From Octopus sinensis (Eukaryota), in contig NW_021828667.1 in assembly GCF_006345805.1 (NCBI RefSeq), forward strand, positions 1 through 8,064: 8,064 bases of DNA, written 5' to 3'. Positions 1 to 8,064 of this stretch are shown here, piece after piece (position 1 is the first letter of the stretch; each line of letters starts with the position of its first letter). The notes beneath the pieces were generated by a model that saw nothing but the letters and a program-made list of their open reading frames with translations, did not search any database and was not told where the DNA came from. The position numbers and the translations under genes are program-made.

Positions 1-439
1 GGTACTTGAGATTAGTAATAGATGCGTAATATATTATGCAATTTTGGGAGGTGGCCAAGATGTGAAGATACGAGGGTACTTGAGATTATGTAATAGATTG
101 CGTAATAAATTGCGTAATATATTATGTAATTTGGAGAGGTCCCTTGATGTGAAGATACGAGGGTACTTGAAATTATGTAATTGATTGCGTAATAAGTTGC
201 GTAATATATTATGCAATTTTATTAAGTGCCAAGATGTGAAGATACGAGCGGTACTGAGATTATGTAATAGATTGCGTAATAAATTCGTAAATATTATGCA
301 ATTTGGGATGTGCCAAGAAGATGTGAAGATACGAGGGTACTTGAGATTATGTAATAGATTGCGTAATAAATTAGGTAATATATTATGTAATTTGTGAAAG
401 TCTCTAGATTTATGTATATGAGGGTACTTGAGATTATGT

Positions 440-722
440 AAGATTGGAAAGTACAAGAAGCTCTCTGAACGGTATCTGTTCACTCCACATCGCCGTCGAG
501 ACTTCCGGCGTCATCGGGCGAAAAAGTCTCTTTCCTTTCTAAAAAAGCTTGGCCGCATGATCTCCCATAAACGGGGAGACCCACGCGAGTCCAAGTGGCT
601 TTTCGAAAGAATTTCCTTGGCCATAGTACGTGGAAACTGTGTTTCCATTTACGATGCCGGGAATTTAGTTAGTTAATAACTATTTGTTAATTACATATAA
701 CTTTTAAAAATAAAAAAAAAAA
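440..722 (+). mobile_element. 5'-truncated non-LTR retrotransposon, CRE-like RLE clade, family A, copy 1
   Basis: Encodes KIGKY...FTP...LGRMISHKRGDPRESKWLFERISLAIVRGNC, with the stop at 674-676. AT-rich 3' UTR and an A11 tail at 712-722 follow. Three single-base insertions (~487, ~517, ~523) shift the frame locally relative to copy 2. Confidence 0.9.
712..722 (+). other. Poly(A) tail of family A copy 1 (A11). Also at 4008-4017 (A10) and 6532-6542 (A11)
   Basis: Direct count of the A-runs after CTTTTAAAAAT. Confidence 0.9.
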
Positions 723-900
723 GTTGCGTAATATATTATGCAATTTTGGGAGGTGCCAAGATGTGAAGATATGAGGATACTTGAGATTATATAATAGATT
801 GCGTAATAAATTAGGTAATATATTATGTAATTTGGAGAGGTCCCTTGATGTGAAGATACGAGGGTACTTGAGATTATGTAATAGATTGCGTAATAAATTG

Positions 901-1327
901 GGAGGATGGTAAGAGACCTGACGGGGTCTCACTCTTTCCCTACAAGAACGGGAAAGCAATCGTCTGGGATGCGACATGCTCTGATACTTTCGCATCATCA
1001 TGTCTTTCCTTGTCGGCGGTCGAGGCTGGCTCAGCAGCCAAGAGGGCGGAGACGAAGAAGGCATCTAAATACGCCTCCCTGATGGACCGTTTCATCTTCG
1101 AACCGGTGTCAGTTGAAACTTCCGGTGTACTTGGCCGTCTACTCTCTGTTTCCTCTCGAAGATCGGAAGGTCATTGGGAAGGGCGAGGAACGACCCCCGT
1201 GAACTGATGTGGCTTTTTGAGCGCATCTCTCTCGCAGTTCTAAGGGGGAACTGTTCCTCGATCCTCCTCTCGGCTGCGGTTCCGCCTCTTAATTAGTGAT
1301 TTCTTACCTTATAAACTGTCGATTAAA

Positions 1328-1356
<29 letters not shown>
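901..1356 (+). mobile_element. 5'-truncated non-LTR retrotransposon, CRE-like RLE clade, family B, copy 1
   Basis: Encodes EDGKRPDGVSLFPYKNGKAIVWDATCSDTFA...KKASKY...VETSG, with the stop at 1294-1296 and an A28 tail at 1329-1356. A 1-bp deletion near 1135 (GGCC vs GGCCC) shifts the frame relative to copy 2. Confidence 0.92.
1329..1356 (+). other. Poly(A) tail of family B copy 1 (A28). An identical-length A28 lies at 4539-4566
   Basis: Direct count of the A-runs after GATTAAAT. Confidence 0.95.
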
Positions 1357-1359
<3 letters not shown>

Positions 1360-1769
1360 CGTAATATTATGTAATTGGAGTGGTCCCTTGATGTGAGATA
1401 CGAGGCTACTTGAGATTATGTAATAGATTGCGTAATAAATTGCGTAATATATTATGTAATTTGGAGTGTCCCTGAGGTGAAGATACGAGGCTACTTGAGA
1501 TTATGTATATATTTGCGTAATAAATTGCGTAATATATTATGCAATTTTGGGAAGTGCCAAGATGTGAAGATACGAGGGTACTTGAATTATGTAATAGATT
1601 GCGTAATATATTATGCAATTTTGGGAGGTGCCAAGATGTGAAGATACGAGGGTACTTGAGATTATGTAATAGATTGCGTAATAAATTGCGTAATATATTA
1701 TGCAATTTGTGGAAGTCTCTAGATTTATGTATATGAGGGTACTTGAGATTATGTAATAGATTGCGTAAT

Positions 1770-1795
1770 AAATTGCGTAATATATTATGCAATTT
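1770..1795. other. 26-bp near-perfect palindrome AAATTGCGTAATATATTATGCAATTT (representative copy; present in most monomers)
   Basis: The arms pair at 12 of 13 positions with one G-T mismatch. Monomers reading TTATGTAAT have two G-T mismatches. Confidence 0.9.
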
Positions 1796-3738
1796 TGGGA
1801 TGTGCCAAGATGTTAAGATACGAGGGTATTTGAGATTATGTAATAGATTGCGTAATAAATTGCGTAATATATTATGTAATTTGGAGAGGTCCCTTGATGT
1901 GAAGATACGAGGGTACTTGAGATTATGTTATAGATTGCGTAATAAATTGCGTAATATATTATGCAATTTTGGGAGGTGCCAAGATGTGAAGATACGAGGG
2001 TACTTGAGATTATCTAATAGATTGCGTAATAAATTCGTAATATATTATGCAATTTTGGGATGTGCCAAGATGTGAAGATACGAGGGTACTTGAGATTATG
2101 TAATAGATTGCGAATAAATTGTGTGTAATATATTATGCAATTCTGGATGTGCCAAGATGTGAAGATACGAGGGTACTTGAGATTATGTAATAGATTGCGT
2201 AATAAATTAGGTAATATATTATGTAATTTGTGGAAGTCTCTAGATTTAAGTATATGAGGGTACTTGAGATTATTAAATAAATTATGTAATAAATTGCGTA
2301 ATATAATATGCAATTTTGGGAGGTGCCAAGATGTGAAGATACGAGGGTACTTGAGATTATGTAATAGATTGCGTAATAAATTGTGTAATATATTATGCAA
2401 TTTCGGAGCTGCCAAGATATGAAGATATGAGAAAACTTGAGATTATGTAATAGATTGCGTAATAATTAGGTCAATATATTATGTAATTTGTGGAAGTCTC
2501 TAGATTTAAGTATATGAGGGTACTTGAGATTATTAAATAAATTATGTAATAAATTGCGTAATATATAATGCTATTTGGGGAGTTCCCAAGATTTAGTGAT
2601 ACGAGGGTACTTGAGATTATGTAAAGATTGCGTCATATATTGCGTAATATATTATGCAATTTGTGAAAGTCTCTAGATTTATGTATATGAGGGTACTTGA
2701 GATTATGTAATAGATTGCGTAATAAATTGCGTAATATAATATGCAATTTTGGGAGGTGCCAAGATGTGAAGATACGAGGGTACTTGAGATTATGTAATAG
2801 ATTGCGTAATAAATTGTGTAATATATTATGCAATTTCGGGATGTGCCAAGATGTGAAGATACGAGGGTACTTGAGATTATGTAATAGATTGCGTAATAAA
2901 TTGCGTAATATATTATGTAATTTGGAGAGGTCCCTTGATGTGAAGATACGAGGGTACTTGAAATTATGTAATTGATTGCGTAATAAGTTGCGTAATATAT
3001 TATGCAATTTTATTATGTGCCAAGATGTGAAGATACGAGGGTACTTGAGATTATGTAATAGATTGCGTAATAAATTCGTAATATATTATGCAATTTTGGG
3101 ATGTGCCAAGATGTGAAGATACGAGGGTACTTGAGATTATGTAATAGATTGCGTAATAAATTAGGTAATATATTATGTAATTTGGAGAGGTCCCTTGATG
3201 TGAAGATCTGAGGGTACTTGAGATTATGTAATAGATTGCGTCATATATTGCGTAATATATTATGCAATTTGTGGAAGTCTCTAGATTTATGTATATAAGG
3301 GTACTTGAGATTATGTAATAGATTGCGTAATATATTATGCAATTTTGGGAGGTGCCAAGATGTGAAGATACGAGGGTACTTGAGATTATGTAATAGATTG
3401 CGTAATAAATTGCGTAATATATTATGTAATTTGGAGAGGTCCCTTGATGTGAAGATACGAGGGTACTTGAAATTATGTAATTGATTGCGTAATAAGTTGC
3501 GTAATATATTATGCAATTTTATTATGTGCCAAGATGTGAAGATACGAGGGTACTTGAGATTATGTAATAGATTGCGTAATAAATTCGTAATATATTATGC
3601 AATTTTGGGATGTGCCAAGATGTGAAGATACGAGGGTACTTGAGATTATGTAATAGATTGCGTAATAAATTAGGTAATATATTATGTAATTTGTGAAAGT
3701 CTCTAGATTTATGTATATGAGGGTACTTGAGATTATGT

Positions 3739-3972
3739 AAGATTGGAAAGTACAAGAAGCTCTCTGAACGGTATCTGTTCACTCCCATTGCCGTCGAGAC
3801 TTCCGGCGTCATCGGCGAAAAGTCTCTTTCCTTTCTAAAAAAGCTTGGCCGCATGATCTCCCATAAACGGGGAGACCCACGCGAGTCCAAGTGGCTTTTC
3901 GAAAGAATTTCCTTGGCCATAGTACGTGGAAACTGTGTTTCCATTTACGATGCCGGGAATTTAGTTAGTTAA
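3739..3972 (+). pseudogene. C-terminal 77 aa of a CRE-type RT-RLE protein (family A), 5'-truncated with no start codon of its own
   Basis: KIGKYKKLSERYLFTPIAVETSGVIGEKSLSFLKKLGRMISHKRGDPRESKWLFERISLAIVRGNCVSIYDAGNLVS*. The KxxKY, FxPxxxETxG and RxSxAxxRGN motifs are characteristic of the CRE RLE C-terminus (recognised from memory, not by search). Confidence 0.85.
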
Positions 3973-4017
3973 TAACTATTTGTTAATTACATATAACTTT
4001 TAAAAATAAAAAAAAAA
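3739..4017 (+). mobile_element. CRE-like non-LTR retrotransposon 3' end, family A, copy 2 (cleanest)
   Basis: Uninterrupted frame 3739-3972, 3' UTR and A10 tail at 4008-4017. Its 5' and 3' junctions match copy 1. Confidence 0.92.
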
Positions 4018-4108
4018 GTTGCGTAATATATTATGCAATTTTGGGAGGTGCCAAGATGTGAAGATATGAGGATACTTGAGATTATATAATAGATTGCGTA
4101 ATAAATTG

Positions 4109-4537
4109 GGAGGATGGTAAGAGACCTGACGGGGTCTCACTCTTTCCCTACAAGAACGGGAAAGCAATCGTCTGGGATGCGACATGCTCTGATACTTTCG
4201 CATCATCATGTCTTTCCTTGTCGGCGGTCGAGGCTGGCTCAGCAGCCAAGAGGGCGGAGACGAAGAAGGCATCTAAGTACGCCTCCCTGATGGACCGTTT
4301 CATCTTCGAACCGGTGTCAGTGGAAACTTCCGGTGTACTTGGCCCGTCTACTCTCCGTTTCCTCTCGAAGATCGGAAGGTCATTGGGAAGGGCGAGGAAC
4401 GACCCCCGTGAACTGATGTGGCTTTTTGAGCGCATCTCTCTCGCAGTTCTAAGGGGGAACTGTTCCTCGATCCTCCTCTCGGCTGCGGTTCCGCCTCTTA
4501 ATTAGTGATTTCTTTACCTTATAAACTGTCGATTAAA

Positions 4538-4566
<29 letters not shown>
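4109..4566 (+). mobile_element. CRE-like non-LTR retrotransposon 3' end, family B, copy 2 (cleanest)
   Basis: Uninterrupted frame 4110-4505, short 3' UTR and A28 tail at 4539-4566. Its junctions match copy 1. Confidence 0.93.
4110..4505 (+). pseudogene. C-terminal 131 aa of a CRE-type RT-RLE protein (family B), including the PD-(D/E)xK-type catalytic motifs. No RT, no CCHC knuckle, no N-terminus
   Basis: Manual translation: EDGKRPDGVSLFPYKNGKAIVWDATCSDTFASSCLSLSAVEAGSAAKRAETKKASKYASLMDRFIFEPVSVETSGVLGPSTLRFLSKIGRSLGRARNDPRELMWLFERISLAVLRGNCSSILLSAAVPPLN*. RPDG, WDxT and KxxKY are present. The ORF track captures only 4218-4505, from an internal TTG. Confidence 0.88.
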
Positions 4567-4569
<3 letters not shown>

Positions 4570-6259
4570 CGTAATATATTATGTAATTTGGAGTGGTCCC
4601 TTGATGTGAAGATACGAGGCTACTTGAGATTATGTAATAGATTGCGTAATAAATTGCGTAATATATTATGTAATTTGGAGTGGTCCCTTGATGTGAAGAT
4701 ACGAGGCTACTTGAGATTATGTAATATATTGCGTAATAAATTGCGTAATATATTATGCAATTTTGGGAAGTGCCAAGATGTGAAGATAAGAGGGTACTTG
4801 AATTATGTAATAGATTGCGTAATATATTATGCAATTTTGGGAGGTGCCAAGATGTGAAGATACGAGGGTACTTGAGATTATGTAATAGATTGCGTAATAA
4901 ATTGCGTAATATATTATGCAATTTGTGGAAGTCTCTAGATTTATGTATATGAGGGTACTTGAGATTATGTAATAGATTGCGTAATAAATTGCGTAATATA
5001 TTATGCAATTTTGGGATGTGCCAAGATGTTAAGATACGAGGGTATTTGAGATTATGTAATAGATTGCGTAATAAATTGCGTAATATATTATGTAATTTGG
5101 AGAGGTCCCTTGATGTGAAGATACGAGGGTACTTGAGATTATGTTATAGATTGCGTAATAAATTGCGTAATATATTATGCAATTTTGGGAGGTGCCAAGA
5201 TGTGAAGATACGAGGGTACTTGAGATTATCTAATAGATTGCGTAATAAATTCGTAATATATTATGCAATTTTGGGATGTGCCAAGATGTGAAGATACGAG
5301 GGTACTTGAGATTATGTAATAGATTGCGTAATAAATTGTGTAATATATTATGCAATTTCGGGATGTGCCAAGATGTGAAGATACGAGGGTACTTGAGATT
5401 ATGTAATAGATTGCGTAATAAATTAGGTAATATATTATGTAATTTGTGGAAGTCTCTAGATTTAAGTATATGAGGGTACTTGAGATTATTAAATAAATTA
5501 TGTAATAAATTGCGTAATATAATATGCAATTTTGGGAGGTGCCAAGATGTGAAGATACGAGGGTTCTTGAGATTATGTAATAGATTGCGTAATAAATTGT
5601 GTAATATATTATGCAATTTCGGGAGGTGCCAAGATATGAAGATATGAGAAAACTTGAGATTATGTAATAGATTGCGTAATAAATTAGGTAATATATTATG
5701 TAATTTGTGGAAGTCTCTAGATTTAAGTATATGAGGGTCTTGAGATTATTAAATAAATTATGTAATAAATTGCGTAATATATAATGCTATTGGGGAGTTC
5801 CAAGATTTAGTGATACGAGGGTACTTGAGATTATGTAAAGATTGCGTAATATTTGCGTAATATTTATGCAATTTTGGAATCTCTAGATTTATGTATATGA
5901 GGGTACTTCGATTATGTAATAGATGCGTAATAAATTGCGTAATATATTATGCATTTTGGGAAGTGCCAAGATGTGAAGATACGAGGTACTTGAGATTATG
6001 TAATAGATTGCGTAATAATTGCGTAATATATTATGTAATGTGGAGAGGTCCCTTGATGTGAAGATACGAGGGTACTGAAATTATGTAATTGATTGCGTAA
6101 TAGTTGCGTAATATATTATGCAATTTTATTATGTGCCAGATGTGAAGATACGAGGGTACTTGAGATTATGTAATAGATTGCGTAATAAATTAAGGTAATA
6201 TATTATGTAATTTGTGAAAGTCTCTAGATTTATGTATATGAGGGTACTTGAGATTATGT

Positions 6260-6542
6260 AAGTTGTAAGTAGAAAGCAAGAAGCTCTCTGAACGTATCCG
6301 GTTCACTCCCATCGCCGTCGAGACTTCCGGCGTCATCGGCGAAAAGTCTCTTTCCTTTCTAAAAAAGCTTGGCCGCATGATCTCCCATAAACGGGGAGAC
6401 CCACGCGAGTCCAAGTGGCTTTTCGAAAGAATTTCCTTGGCCATAGTACGTGGAAACTGTGTTTCCATTTACGATGCCGGGAATTTAGTTAGTTAATAAC
6501 TATTTGTTAATTACATATAACTTTTAAAAATAAAAAAAAAAA
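6260..6542 (+). mobile_element. CRE-like family A, copy 3 (noisy 5' end)
   Basis: From ~6305 onward it matches copies 1 and 2. Stop at 6494-6496 and A11 tail at 6532-6542. The first ~45 bp carry several indels. Confidence 0.88.
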
Positions 6543-6719
6543 GTTGCGTAATATATTATGCAATTTTGGGAGGTGCCAAGATGTGAAGATATGAGGATAC
6601 TTGAGATTATATAATAGATTGCGTAATAAATTAGGTAATATATTATGTAATTTGGAGAGGTCCCTTGATGTGAAGATACGAGGGTACTTGAGATTATGTA
6701 ATAGATTCGTAATAATTTG

Positions 6720-7040
6720 GGAGGATGTGTAAGAGACCTGACGGGTCTCACTCTTCCCTACAAGAACGAGAAAGCAATCGTCTGGGAGGCGACATGCTCT
6801 GATACTTTCGCATCATCATGTCTTTCCTTGTCGGCGGTCGAGGCTGCTCAGCAGCCAGAGGGCGGAGACGAAGAAGGCATCTAAGTACGCCTCCCTGATG
6901 GACCGTTTCATCTTCGAACCGGTGTCAGTGGAAACTTCCGGTGTACTTGGCCCGTCTACTCTCTGTTTCCTCTCTCGAGATCGGAAGGTCATTGGGAAGG
7001 GCGAGGAACGACCCCCGTGAACTGATGTGTGCTTTTGTGA
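6720..7040 (+). mobile_element. CRE-like family B, copy 3, lacking its 3' ~135 bp and poly(A)
   Basis: Collinear with copy 2 from GGAGGATG to ...GAACTGATGTG(T)GCTTTT, then switches directly to satellite GTAATAT...ATGCAATTTTGGGAGG at ~7041. Confidence 0.88.
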
Positions 7041-8064
7041 GTAATATTTATGCAATTTTGGGAGGTGGCCAAGATGTGAAGATACGAGGGTACTTGAGAT
7101 TATGTAATAGATTGCGTAATAAATTGCGTAATATATTATGTAATTTGGAGAGGTCCCTTGATGTGAAGATACGAGGGTACTTGAAATTATGTAATTGATT
7201 GCGTAATAAGTGCGTAATAATTATGCAATTTTGGGAGGTGCCAAGATGTGAAGATACGAGGGTACTTGAGATTATCTAATAGATTGCGTAATAAATTCGT
7301 AATATATTATGCAATTTTGGGATGTGCCAAGATGTGAAGATACAAGGGTACTTGAGATTATGTAATAGATTGCGTCATATATTGCGTAATATATTATGTA
7401 ATTTGTGAAAGTCTCTAGATTTATGTATATGAGGGTACTTGAGATTATGTAATAGATTGCGTAATAAATTGCGTAATATATTATGTAATTTGGAGAGGTC
7501 CCTTGATGTGAAGATACGAGGGTACTTGAGATTATGTAATTGATTGCGTAATAATTGCGTAATATATTATGCATTTTTGGGAGGTGCCAATATGTGAAGA
7601 TACGAGGGTACTTGAGATTATCTAATAGATTGCGTAATAAATTCGTAATATAATATCAATTTTGGGAGGTGCCATATGTGAAGATACGAGGGTACTTGAG
7701 ATTATGTAATAGATTGCGTAATAATTGTGTATATATTATGCAATTCGGATGTGCCAAGATGTGAAGATACGAGGTACTTGAGATTATATGTAATAGATTG
7801 CGTAATAAATTAGGTAATATATTATGTAATTTGTGGAAGTCTCTAGATTTAAGTATATGAGGGTACTTGAGATTATTAAATAAATTATGTAATAAATTGC
7901 GTATATAATATGCAATTTTGAAGGTGTGCCAGATGTGAAGATACGAGGGTACTTGAGATTATGTAATAGATTGCGTAATAAATTGTGTAATATATTATGC
8001 AATTTCGGGAGGTGCCAAGATATGAAGATATGAGAAAACTTGAGATTATGTAATAGATTGCGTA

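What the first reader, a model, noticed from the sequence alone, without database searches (positions are those of the whole stretch)
440..1356. Two different CRE-type RLE retrotransposon families inserted at the same register and orientation in an 87-bp satellite: candidate satellite-targeting retroelement system
Seen: family A ends poly(A)|GTTGCGTAATATATTATG (723, 4018, 6543) and family B ends poly(A)|TTGCGTAATATATTATG (1357, 4567). Both sit at the TAATAA(A)^(G)TTGCG step of the third 12-bp subrepeat, within 1-3 nt of each other, on the same strand. Established: RLE non-LTR elements nick a specific sequence and prime reverse transcription at the 3' junction. Known targets are multicopy loci such as SL-RNA genes (CRE1/SLACS/CZAR, NeSL), rDNA (R2, R4), U2 genes (Utopia) and telomeric repeats (MoTeR). 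Inference: this CRE lineage uses a complex satellite monomer as its target, which I do not recognise as a described target class. Caveat: the six remnants derive from only two independent insertions, and poly(A) priming in an A-rich tract could produce the shared site without true sequence specificity.
Basis: partly seen in the sequence, partly recalled or inferred. Interest (0 to 1): 0.8.

Follow-up and report, generated by a model that had tools for sequence, protein, structure and literature searches.

The report
Octopus LINE fragments in a satellite
Two truncated copies of ordinary octopus jumping genes (LINEs with a restriction-like nuclease) landed at the same A-rich spot of an 87-bp satellite repeat. 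Other copies of both families sit outside that satellite, so this is not a satellite-homing system.

Summary
In an 87-bp satellite, family A (441-722, 3740-4017, 6262-6542) and family B (900-1356, 4108-4566, 6718-~7040) are 5'-truncated, polyadenylated 3' ends of two related non-LTR retrotransposons. Both join the satellite right after GCGTAATAA(A), on the same strand. The six remnants are two insertions copied three times by segmental duplication.

B keeps an intact C-terminal restriction-like endonuclease (RLE) domain. Full-length relatives are single ORFs with RT, a CCHC motif and RLE, and no APE endonuclease.

Family B is 100% identical over 99 aa to Octopus sinensis XP_029656802.1. The 22-kb locus around that gene holds independent copies of both families outside the satellite, with different truncation points, tails and target-site duplications (12-13 bp and 9 bp). 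One copy has a 5' inversion.

All four target sites carry ATAA(A) just 5' of the first nick. The shared satellite site is the only TAATAA/ATAAA in the monomer on either strand. Many relatives (37 of 65) end in (TAA)n, as Dong/R4 elements do.

The best reading is weakly A-rich/(TAA)-preferring RLE LINEs of the R4-Dong/HERO kind hitting the one suitable site per monomer. "CRE-type" could not be tested. Interest is low.

The parts
441..722 (+). Family A, copy 1. It is a 5'-truncated 3' end: the last ~75 codons of the RLE domain, a ~40-nt 3' UTR and an A-rich tail. A frameshift lies near 487.
   Evidence: It is 96.8% identical to the independent copy L091:17179-16907.
3740..4017 (+). Family A, copy 2, the cleanest copy. 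The ORF tail reads ...GKYKKLSERYLFTPIAVETSGVIGEKSLSFLKKLGRMISHKRGDPRESKWLFERISLAIVRGNCVSIYDAGNLVS*.
6262..6542 (+). Family A, copy 3. It is a segmental duplicate and its 5' junction is blurred by indels.
900..1356 (+). Family B, copy 1. It is a 5'-truncated 3' end: the RLE domain from RPDG onward (one frameshift), a ~30-nt 3' UTR with AATAAA, and a 32-nt poly(A).
4108..4566 (+). Family B, copy 2, with an intact 132-codon reading frame: WEDGKRPDG...WDATCSDT...AETKKASKY...VETSGVLG...ERISLAVLRGN...*. This is the catalytic core of the restriction-like endonuclease.
   Evidence: invariant P7 D8 G9, D24 T26, K54 Y58, E73; E51 in at least 90%; AF2 pLDDT 88.9; best folds are PD-(D/E)XK nucleases, including the R2 RLE, but weakly; 100% identity to P0072 over 99 aa
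6718..7040 (+). Family B, copy 3. An internal deletion removed its 3' part and joined it back to the satellite, so no poly(A) junction remains.
888..900 (+). Target motif as it survives 5' of B1: GCGTAATAAATT(G). It is the second 12-bp subrepeat and the only TAATAA/ATAAA in the monomer.
723..899 (+). Two satellite monomers between A1 and B1. The same interval is one monomer in copy 2 (4018-4107) and two in copy 3 (6543-6717).
815..3058 (+). Block that reappears at 4023-6261 at 95.8% identity. This is the segmental (higher-order) duplication that multiplied the two insertions.

Best explanation
A and B are dead, 5'-truncated copies of two related octopus LINE families of the R2 group. The full elements have a single ORF: an N-terminal DNA/chromatin-binding module, then RT, then a CCHC motif and a restriction-like endonuclease.

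Proposed mechanism: the endonuclease nicks the bottom strand at A/T-rich sites of the type ATAA(A)^, that is short (TAA)-like or AATAAA-like tracts. The T-rich 3' end that is released pairs with the AAUAAA-poly(A) end of the element RNA and primes reverse transcription. The second nick falls at a variable distance. This gives TSDs of 2-13 bp or small deletions, and the cDNA is often truncated or inverted at its 5' end.

The 87-bp monomer has exactly one such site, GCGTAATAA(A)|TTGCG, on one strand only. Independent insertions into the satellite therefore land in the same register and orientation without any recognition of the satellite as such. Afterwards the array, with its two passengers, was copied three times by unequal exchange or segmental duplication.

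Shown: the element anatomy, the junctions, the independent copies elsewhere and the uniqueness of the motif. Inferred: the position of the nick, priming by base pairing, and the clade (R4-Dong or HERO rather than CRE).
For: (1) Element identity.
- B2 has an intact RLE tail. Upstream of RPDG the homologues show a C-x-C...H...C motif.
- Nearly all conserved residues fit a PD...D...E..K nuclease. The AF2 model has pLDDT 88.9. Foldseek's best hits are cap-snatching endonucleases and the R2Tg, R2Bm and turtle R2 RLEs.
- The profile search finds 13,164 protein clusters. Seventeen full-length members scanned have RVT_1 and no APE. The only RT hits in the PDB are R2 proteins.

(2) Source genome and independent copies.
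- P0072 is XP_029656802.1 of Octopus sinensis and is 100% identical to B residues 2-100.
- Its locus L091 contains no copy of the satellite.
- L091 holds a B copy (9839-12049, 97.7% nt identity). It has an inverted 5' segment at 9576-9815, a 3' end ...TTAATAAAT|ATTGGTGAG and a 9-bp TSD ATTGGTGAG.
- L091 also holds an A copy on the other strand (17192-16907, 96.8% nt identity). It starts 13 nt further 5', has a ~41-nt poly(A) and a 12-13-bp TSD (A)ATAATTAGTCTT.

(3) Target sites.
- TAATAAA^TTGCG (window B)
- TAATAA^GTTGCG (window A)
- AAATAA^TAATTAG (L091 A)
- CATAAAC^ATTGG (L091 B)

(4) TAATAA and ATAAA each occur once per monomer, on the top strand only.

(5) Family context.
- 37 of 65 relatives have (TAA)>=3 on the coding strand within 500 bp after the stop codon, against 40 of 446 background windows.
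- L040 is flanked by (TAA)n on both sides and L028 at its 5' end; the L028 contig stops before the 3' junction.
- Some junctions carry only 2-3 TAA units.
- (TAA)n is the published Dong target in insects, molluscs and cnidarians (PMC7998251).
- HERO elements and some other R2-group elements are non-specific (PMC3636483, PMC4640811).
- Dong-R4 and Hero families are annotated in octopus (PMC13282606, PMC9115989).
Against: - There are only four independent insertion events, two per family, so the ATAA(A) motif rests on very few sites.
- The poly(A) tails hide up to 3 nt of each junction.
- L091 is by construction a non-satellite locus, and it was reached through an annotated gene. It proves that both families can insert elsewhere. 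It does not say what fraction of copies sits in the satellite, so enrichment in the satellite is not excluded.
- The L091 B target (CATAAAC) is not a (TAA) repeat.
- In the NJ tree of the RLE domain, A and B group with fragments whose 3' ends are undefined. A neighbouring family (L011/L012) has no poly(A), no (TAA)n and unrelated flanks. The (TAA)n habit is therefore not shown for the A/B subclade itself.
- The Foldseek matches are not significant (E = 0.06-0.5). A sequence profile of the tail finds no R2 RLE in the PDB.
Confidence: 0.72

Rival explanations
1. One reading: the lineage recognises the complex 87-bp monomer, or a long part of it, as a specific target, the way R2 recognises 28S rDNA.
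For: Two different families lie at the same position within 1 nt and on the same strand. RLE LINEs are often site-specific for repeated targets, including a U2-derived satellite for YURE (PMC4640811).
Against: Both families have an independent copy with unrelated, non-satellite flanks in L091. TSD length varies (2-6, 9 and 12-13 bp, plus a 15-bp deletion) and one copy has a 5' inversion; site-specific elements usually make uniform junctions. There are only two events in the satellite. The site is the single ATAA(A) of the monomer.
Confidence: 0.06
2. A and B are strict (TAA)n-microsatellite-specific Dong elements, and the TAATAA of the monomer is simply a minimal microsatellite target.
For: (TAA)n lies at the 3' end of 37 of 65 relatives, at both ends of L040 and at the 5' end of L028. 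The L091 A copy sits in ATAAATAATAATTA. Both window insertions follow TAATAA. The literature describes this for Dong in molluscs (PMC7998251).
Against: The L091 B copy sits at GACATAAAC^ATTGG, with no TAA repeat. No (TAA)n follows the tail at any of the four junctions. A and B end in long poly(A), not in A(4-9)(TAA)n, and lack the conserved 3' hairpin of the (TAA)n clade. In the RLE tree they lie outside that clade.
Confidence: 0.17
3. There is no sequence preference at all: the elements insert at random and the shared register is coincidence, possibly helped by poly(A) slippage when the junctions are read.
For: There are only two events, and the satellite may be a large fraction of the genome.
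Against: The uniform expectation for the same site within 1-3 nt on the same strand is about 2-4%. All four reconstructed targets carry ATAA(A) directly 5' of the junction.
Confidence: 0.05

Closest known systems
R4/Dong clade of RLE non-LTR retrotransposons (Dong of Bombyx mori; Dong-R4 families annotated in Octopus)
   Same: Single ORF with RT, then CCHC and a restriction-like endonuclease, and no APE. The targets are A/T-rich and TAA-like. Many members of the same protein family end in (TAA)n and are flanked by it. The clade is abundant in octopus genomes (PMC13282606, PMC9115989, PMC7998251).
   Different: A and B carry long poly(A) tails and no (TAA)n at the junction. One of the four targets has no TAA repeat. 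TSDs are variable. No HDV-like ribozyme was detected in the full-length relatives. An RT phylogeny against Dong/R4 references could not be run.
HERO clade (HEROFr, HEROTn, HERODr and others)
   Same: RLE LINEs of the R2 group that mostly lack strict target specificity, with some microsatellite-specific families (PMC4640811, PMC3636483). Hero families are annotated in octopus and other molluscs (PMC13282606, PMC10294476). Dispersed copies with variable TSDs fit this clade.
   Different: No HERO reference sequence was available for comparison, so membership is untested.
CRE clade (CRE1, CRE2, SLACS, CZAR; MoTeR/Cnl1-like)
   Same: The C-terminal CCHC + RLE architecture is the same, and CRE elements insert into tandemly repeated targets in one orientation. 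'CRE' types are reported by automated classification in cephalopods (PMC10294476).
   Different: The target here is not a spliced-leader gene or a telomere repeat. Copies also occur in unique DNA. No Pfam C2H2 domain above threshold was found at the N-terminus of the relatives; one weak zf-C2H2_2 hit was seen in P0128 (E = 0.007). No sequence comparison with CRE references was possible.
YURE (Ciona) inserting into the U2-derived satellite U2_sat, and microsatellite-specific RLE LINEs (Togen, Dong)
   Same: These are precedents for RLE LINEs found repeatedly inside tandem repeats (PMC4640811).
   Different: In those cases many independent copies share the target. Here there are only two, and both families also insert elsewhere.
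L1-type TPRT footprints (5' truncation, twin-priming 5' inversion, variable TSD, A-rich target)
   Same: The footprints look alike: poly(A), truncation, an inversion in L091 B, TSDs of 9-13 bp, and an A-rich motif 5' of the nick.
   Different: The nuclease is a PD-(D/E)XK-type RLE at the C-terminus, not an N-terminal APE. No APE is present in any full-length relative.

Membership tests
RLE-type (R2-group) non-LTR retrotransposon | C-terminal CCHC motif followed by a PD-(D/E)XK-like endonuclease, downstream of the RT in one ORF; no APE domain | tested here: met
   B2 keeps RPDG...WDAT...AE..K..KY. P0005/L003 and P0072 show C-x-C...H...C just upstream. The catalytic-type residues are invariant or nearly so. 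The AF2 model has pLDDT 88.9, and its best folds are PD-(D/E)XK nucleases including the R2 RLE, though with weak E-values. RVT_1 is present and no APE in 17 full-length relatives; P0072 carries RVT_1.
RLE-type (R2-group) non-LTR retrotransposon | Footprints of target-primed reverse transcription: 3' end intact, 5' truncation, tail, TSD or small deletion | tested here: met
CRE clade | RT groups with CRE1/CRE2/SLACS/CZAR in an RT phylogeny | not testable with these tools
   The window copies have no RT. P0072 provides the family-B RT, but no CRE reference sequences are reachable. The only RT hits in the PDB are R2 proteins, at E = 3e-7 to 1e-3.
CRE clade | Site-specific insertion into spliced-leader RNA genes or another single multicopy target | tested here: not met
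   The satellite matches no Rfam family. Copies of both families also lie in non-satellite DNA.
CRE clade | N-terminal C2H2 zinc fingers | tested here: inconclusive
   This cannot be seen in the truncated window copies. Relatives show PHD, PHD + RFX or a C-x2-C...H...C knuckle. There is one weak zf-C2H2_2 hit, in P0128.
R4/Dong clade | Insertion into (TAA)n microsatellites (Dong) or 28S rDNA (R4) | tested here: inconclusive
   This is met for a large part of the protein family (37/65; L040 flanked on both sides, L028 at its 5' end). For A and B themselves, three of four targets contain TAATAA or AATAATAA and one has only ATAAA. No (TAA)n follows the tail.
R4/Dong clade | RT groups with Dong/R4/Rex6 in an RT phylogeny | not testable with these tools
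   No reference sequences are available. The support is indirect: Dong-R4 is the dominant RLE LINE type annotated in octopus (PMC13282606).
R4/Dong clade | HDV-like self-cleaving ribozyme at the 5' end (PMC3774820) | tested here: inconclusive
   No Rfam hit in eight full-length relatives at gathering threshold. None in the 5' UTRs of L040 and L028 at E <= 10. The window copies lack 5' ends, and such ribozymes are easily missed.
HERO clade | RLE LINE without strict target specificity (dispersed copies, variable TSD) | tested here: met
   Four events lie in three kinds of flank. TSDs are 2-6, 9 and 12-13 bp, plus one 15-bp deletion.
HERO clade | RT groups with HERO references | not testable with these tools
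   No reference sequences are available.
   Two of the four independent events are outside the satellite (L091). Caveat: this is a small and biased sample.

The most novel reading that the evidence does not exclude
Although they are not restricted to it, these octopus RLE LINE families might insert into the 87-bp satellite much more often than its share of ATAA(A) sites predicts. That could arise through a preference for TAATAA(A)TTG or for the satellite's chromatin; relatives carry PHD and RFX modules. The satellite would then act as a safe-haven sink, and LINE fragments would be co-amplified as part of its higher-order repeat.
Probability: 0.1. Interest if true: 0.5.

Novelty: new member of a known kind. 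Interest (0 to 1): 0.2.

Why it matters
The main value is as a cautionary result. Two insertions in the same register of a tandem repeat do not show site specificity when the monomer offers only one site that fits a loose A-rich preference.

It also places the window in an Octopus genome. It documents two RLE LINE families there with classic TPRT footprints, including a 5' inversion that is better known from L1. And it shows LINE fragments being multiplied as passengers of a satellite's higher-order repeat.

If the genome-wide census did show enrichment in this satellite, it would be an accessible case for studying how weak target preference and satellite amplification interact.

Tried and rejected
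- Pfam and PDB sequence searches with the A and B tails gave nothing.
- The first homologue search gave only seven short metagenome fragments. Their contigs (L003-L005, L086-L090) have undefined 3' ends and were uninformative.
- The contigs L001/L002 carrying P0006 hold a truncated copy only.
- A degenerate DNA pattern covering both families found nothing in the JGI metagenomes.
- A protein search with a spurious satellite ORF, meant to locate the satellite in other assemblies, found nothing.
- A full-text search for the satellite sequence found nothing.
- Rfam on the satellite was empty, so there is no evidence that it derives from a known RNA gene.
- Rfam for HDV-like ribozymes in full-length relatives was empty.
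- The exact window ORFs are not in the protein collection.
- Dualen (APE + RLE) was considered and dropped, because no relative has an APE.
- An L1-like APE mechanism was rejected for the same reason.
- The idea that A and B are strict (TAA)n Dong elements was weakened by the L091 B target and by the RLE tree.
- Literature searches for PHD/RFX modules in RLE LINEs returned nothing.

Full report
**What is in the window.**
The whole 8,064-bp window is an 87-bp satellite (TRF). I counted 71 monomer anchors. In register the monomer reads GGGTACTTGAGATTAT | GTAATAGATTGC | GTAATAAATTGC | GTAATATATTAT | GCAATTTTGGGAGGTGCCAAGATGTGAAGATACGA.

Two kinds of foreign DNA interrupt it, each three times:
- Family A: 441-722, 3740-4017 and 6262-6542.
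- Family B: 900-1356, 4108-4566 and 6718-~7040.

Poly(A)|GTTGCG begins at 723, 4018 and 6543. Poly(A)|TTGCG begins at 1357 and 4567.

The three A..B units are segmental copies of one another: 815-3058 aligns with 4023-6261 at 95.8%. They differ by one satellite monomer between A and B, by an internal deletion that removed the 3' part of B3, and by many 1-bp indels that look like long-read noise.

**What the inserts are.**
B2 has an open frame of 132 codons. It runs from WEDGKRPDG through WDATCSDT, AETKKASKY and VETSGVLG to ERISLAVLRGN and a stop. A covers the last ~75 codons of a homologous frame; the two tails are 45-52% identical.

Pfam and PDB sequence searches find nothing. Homologues from metagenomes extend upstream into a C-x-C...H...C motif (P0005/L003).

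A profile search of 1.84 billion representative proteins finds 13,164 clusters. In the nine full-length members scanned from that search, the domain sits at the C-terminus of ~900-1,250-aa proteins. Those proteins have a central RVT_1 domain and no APE nuclease. Eight full-length ORFs recovered from JGI metagenome contigs look the same. The only RT hits among solved structures are R2 retrotransposon proteins.

In a 64-sequence alignment the invariant residues are P7 D8 G9, D24 T26, K54 Y58 and E73, with E51 conserved in at least 90%. An AlphaFold model of B2 is confident (pLDDT 88.9). Its best Foldseek matches are PD-(D/E)XK nucleases: bunyavirus cap-snatching endonucleases and the RLE domains of R2Tg, turtle R2 and R2Bm. 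The E-values are only 0.06-0.5.

These are 3' ends of two RLE-type non-LTR retrotransposons inserted by target-primed reverse transcription.

**Where the window comes from, and independent copies.**
Among the representative hits, P0072 (639 aa) is 100% identical to B residues 2-100. It is XP_029656802.1, 'uncharacterized protein LOC115230817' of Octopus sinensis, on contig VCDQ01013100.1 of GCA_006345805.1. The 21.9 kb fetched around it (L091) contains no copy of the 87-bp satellite. It does contain one further copy of each family.

The B copy in L091:
- It is 97.7% identical in DNA to window B over 437 nt, and it runs much further 5' (9839-12049).
- It has an inverted segment at 9576-9815. 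That segment matches the protein region just upstream of the direct part. This is a twin-priming-type 5' inversion.
- It ends ...GAAATTAATAAAT with no long tail.
- It is bracketed by ATTGGTGAG on both sides (9565-9573 and 12051-12059).

The A copy in L091:
- It lies on the other strand (17192-16907) and is 96.8% identical over all 278 nt of window A.
- It starts 13 nt further 5' and has about 41 A's.
- It is bracketed by a 12-13-bp TSD, (A)ATAATTAGTCTT.

These are therefore independent insertions into non-satellite DNA.

There is a caveat. L091 is by construction a non-satellite locus, and it was reached through an annotated gene. It proves that both families can insert elsewhere. It does not give the proportion that do.

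**Why the same register.**
The four empty sites, reconstructed with ^ marking the inferred first nick, are:
- TAATAAA^TTGCG (window B)
- TAATAA^GTTGCG (window A)
- AAATAA^TAATTAG (L091 A)
- CATAAAC^ATTGG (L091 B)

All four carry ATAA(A) immediately 5' of the junction. Both element RNAs end in an AAUAAA-like stretch plus poly(A).

In the consensus monomer, TAATAA and ATAAA each occur once, at positions 30-36 of the top strand, and never on the bottom strand. A loose preference for such sites therefore forces insertions in this satellite into one register and one orientation. Under a uniform model the coincidence would have a probability of about 2-4%.

The second nick is not fixed. It produced a 2-6-bp TSD for window B, a 15-bp deletion with AA/ATG microhomology for window A, and 9 and 12-13 bp in L091. 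Site-specific RLE elements normally give uniform junctions.

**Context from relatives.**
Of 65 related loci with at least 150 bp after the stop codon, 37 have (TAA)>=3 on the coding strand within 500 bp. The background is 40 of 446 windows elsewhere in the loci. The run usually follows directly after a conserved hairpin (CCCTCGG-N11-CCGAGGG, no covariation) and A(4-9). Several family members with different flanks all sit in (TAA)n. L040 is flanked by (TAA)n on both sides, and L028 at its 5' end, where its contig ends before the 3' junction.

This is the published behaviour of Dong in insects, molluscs and cnidarians (PMC7998251, PMC3774820).

However, in a neighbour-joining tree of the RLE domain, A and B lie outside that clade. 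They group with fragments whose ends cannot be defined. A neighbouring family (L011/L012) ends without a tail in unrelated flanks. HERO and some other R2-group elements are known to be non-specific (PMC4640811, PMC3636483).

For octopus, a curated annotation of O. vulgaris lists Dong-R4 (5 families, 1,129 recent insertions), Hero and R2 (PMC13282606). A Dong element was noted in O. bimaculoides (PMC9115989). [quoted passage not shown]

I could not run an RT phylogeny against named references. 'CRE-type' is therefore neither confirmed nor excluded. The evidence leans to R4-Dong or HERO.

**Verdict.**
The clade label is untested. The central inference, a complex satellite monomer as a new target class, is not supported.

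The most likely account is ordinary. Weakly A-rich/(TAA)-preferring RLE LINEs hit the one suitable site per monomer. The satellite then amplified them as passengers.

RLE LINEs inside tandem repeats also have precedents: Dong, Togen and YURE in U2_sat (PMC4640811).

What remains open is quantitative: whether the satellite receives more insertions than its share of suitable sites. That needs a genome-wide census, which these tools could not provide.

**What led nowhere.**
- DNA and protein searches for the satellite or for further A/B copies in metagenome collections.
- A text search for the satellite.
- Rfam on the satellite and on the 5' ends of relatives.
- Short metagenome contigs of the closest relatives.
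- Literature searches for the PHD/RFX modules.

Noticed in passing
window 815-3058 vs 4023-6261; 7020-7045: The A..B block and about 2 kb of satellite are present three times (95.8% identity). There is one or two monomers between A and B. The third B copy is cut by an internal deletion that rejoins the satellite near monomer position 41. LINE fragments are being amplified as part of a higher-order repeat, unless this is an assembly expansion.
   Followed up: partly
window 5700-8064: The density of 1-bp indels in monomers and in A3/B3 is much higher than in 1-5700. This looks like poorly polished long-read sequence rather than biology.
   Followed up: no
L091 9576-9815 (minus) and 9839-12049 (plus): The family-B copy in Octopus sinensis has a 5' inversion. 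The inverted segment matches the protein region just upstream of where the direct part begins (P0024 aa 113-169 against 190-883). This twin-priming footprint is well known for L1; I did not check whether it has been described for RLE LINEs.
   Followed up: partly
P0088, P0075 (PHD + RFX); P0026, P0027, P0036 (PHD): Full-length relatives carry an N-terminal PHD finger. Its best PDB matches are TAF3, which is an H3K4me3 reader (from my own knowledge; the tools gave only the name). Some also carry an RFX DNA-binding domain in front of the RT. Three full-text searches found no paper describing such modules in RLE LINEs. They might target insertion through chromatin or DNA binding.
   Followed up: partly
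L024, L030, L032, L033, L047, L054, L058, L064 and others, ~25-45 nt before the (TAA)n: The 3' UTR has a conserved hairpin, CCCTCGG-N11-CCGAGGG, directly before A(4-9)(TAA)n in the (TAA)n-associated clade. It is conserved in sequence and shows no compensatory changes in 16 sequences. A and B lack it.
   Followed up: partly
L040 103-132 and 3564-3584; L028 1261-1296: These are full-length elements. L040 is flanked by (TAA)n on both sides and L028 has (TAA)12 at its 5' end. Both share the 5' terminus (C/T)ATCTGGAGTGGCCTT. Rfam detects no HDV-like ribozyme there, although Dong is reported to have one.
   Followed up: partly
L011 and L012, about 105 nt after the stop codon: Two copies of one family end at ...GTTTGGTTGAA with no poly(A) and no (TAA)n, and continue into unrelated flanks. 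The same protein superfamily therefore includes members that do not use (TAA)n.
   Followed up: no
L091 10001-11920 (XP_029656802.1, LOC115230817): A RefSeq 'uncharacterized protein' gene model of Octopus sinensis is the RT-RLE ORF fragment of a frameshifted LINE copy, so it is a TE annotated as a cellular gene.
   Followed up: yes
L091 20714-21920: An unrelated 94-bp tandem repeat (12.8 copies, 96% matches) runs to the end of the fetched locus.
   Followed up: no
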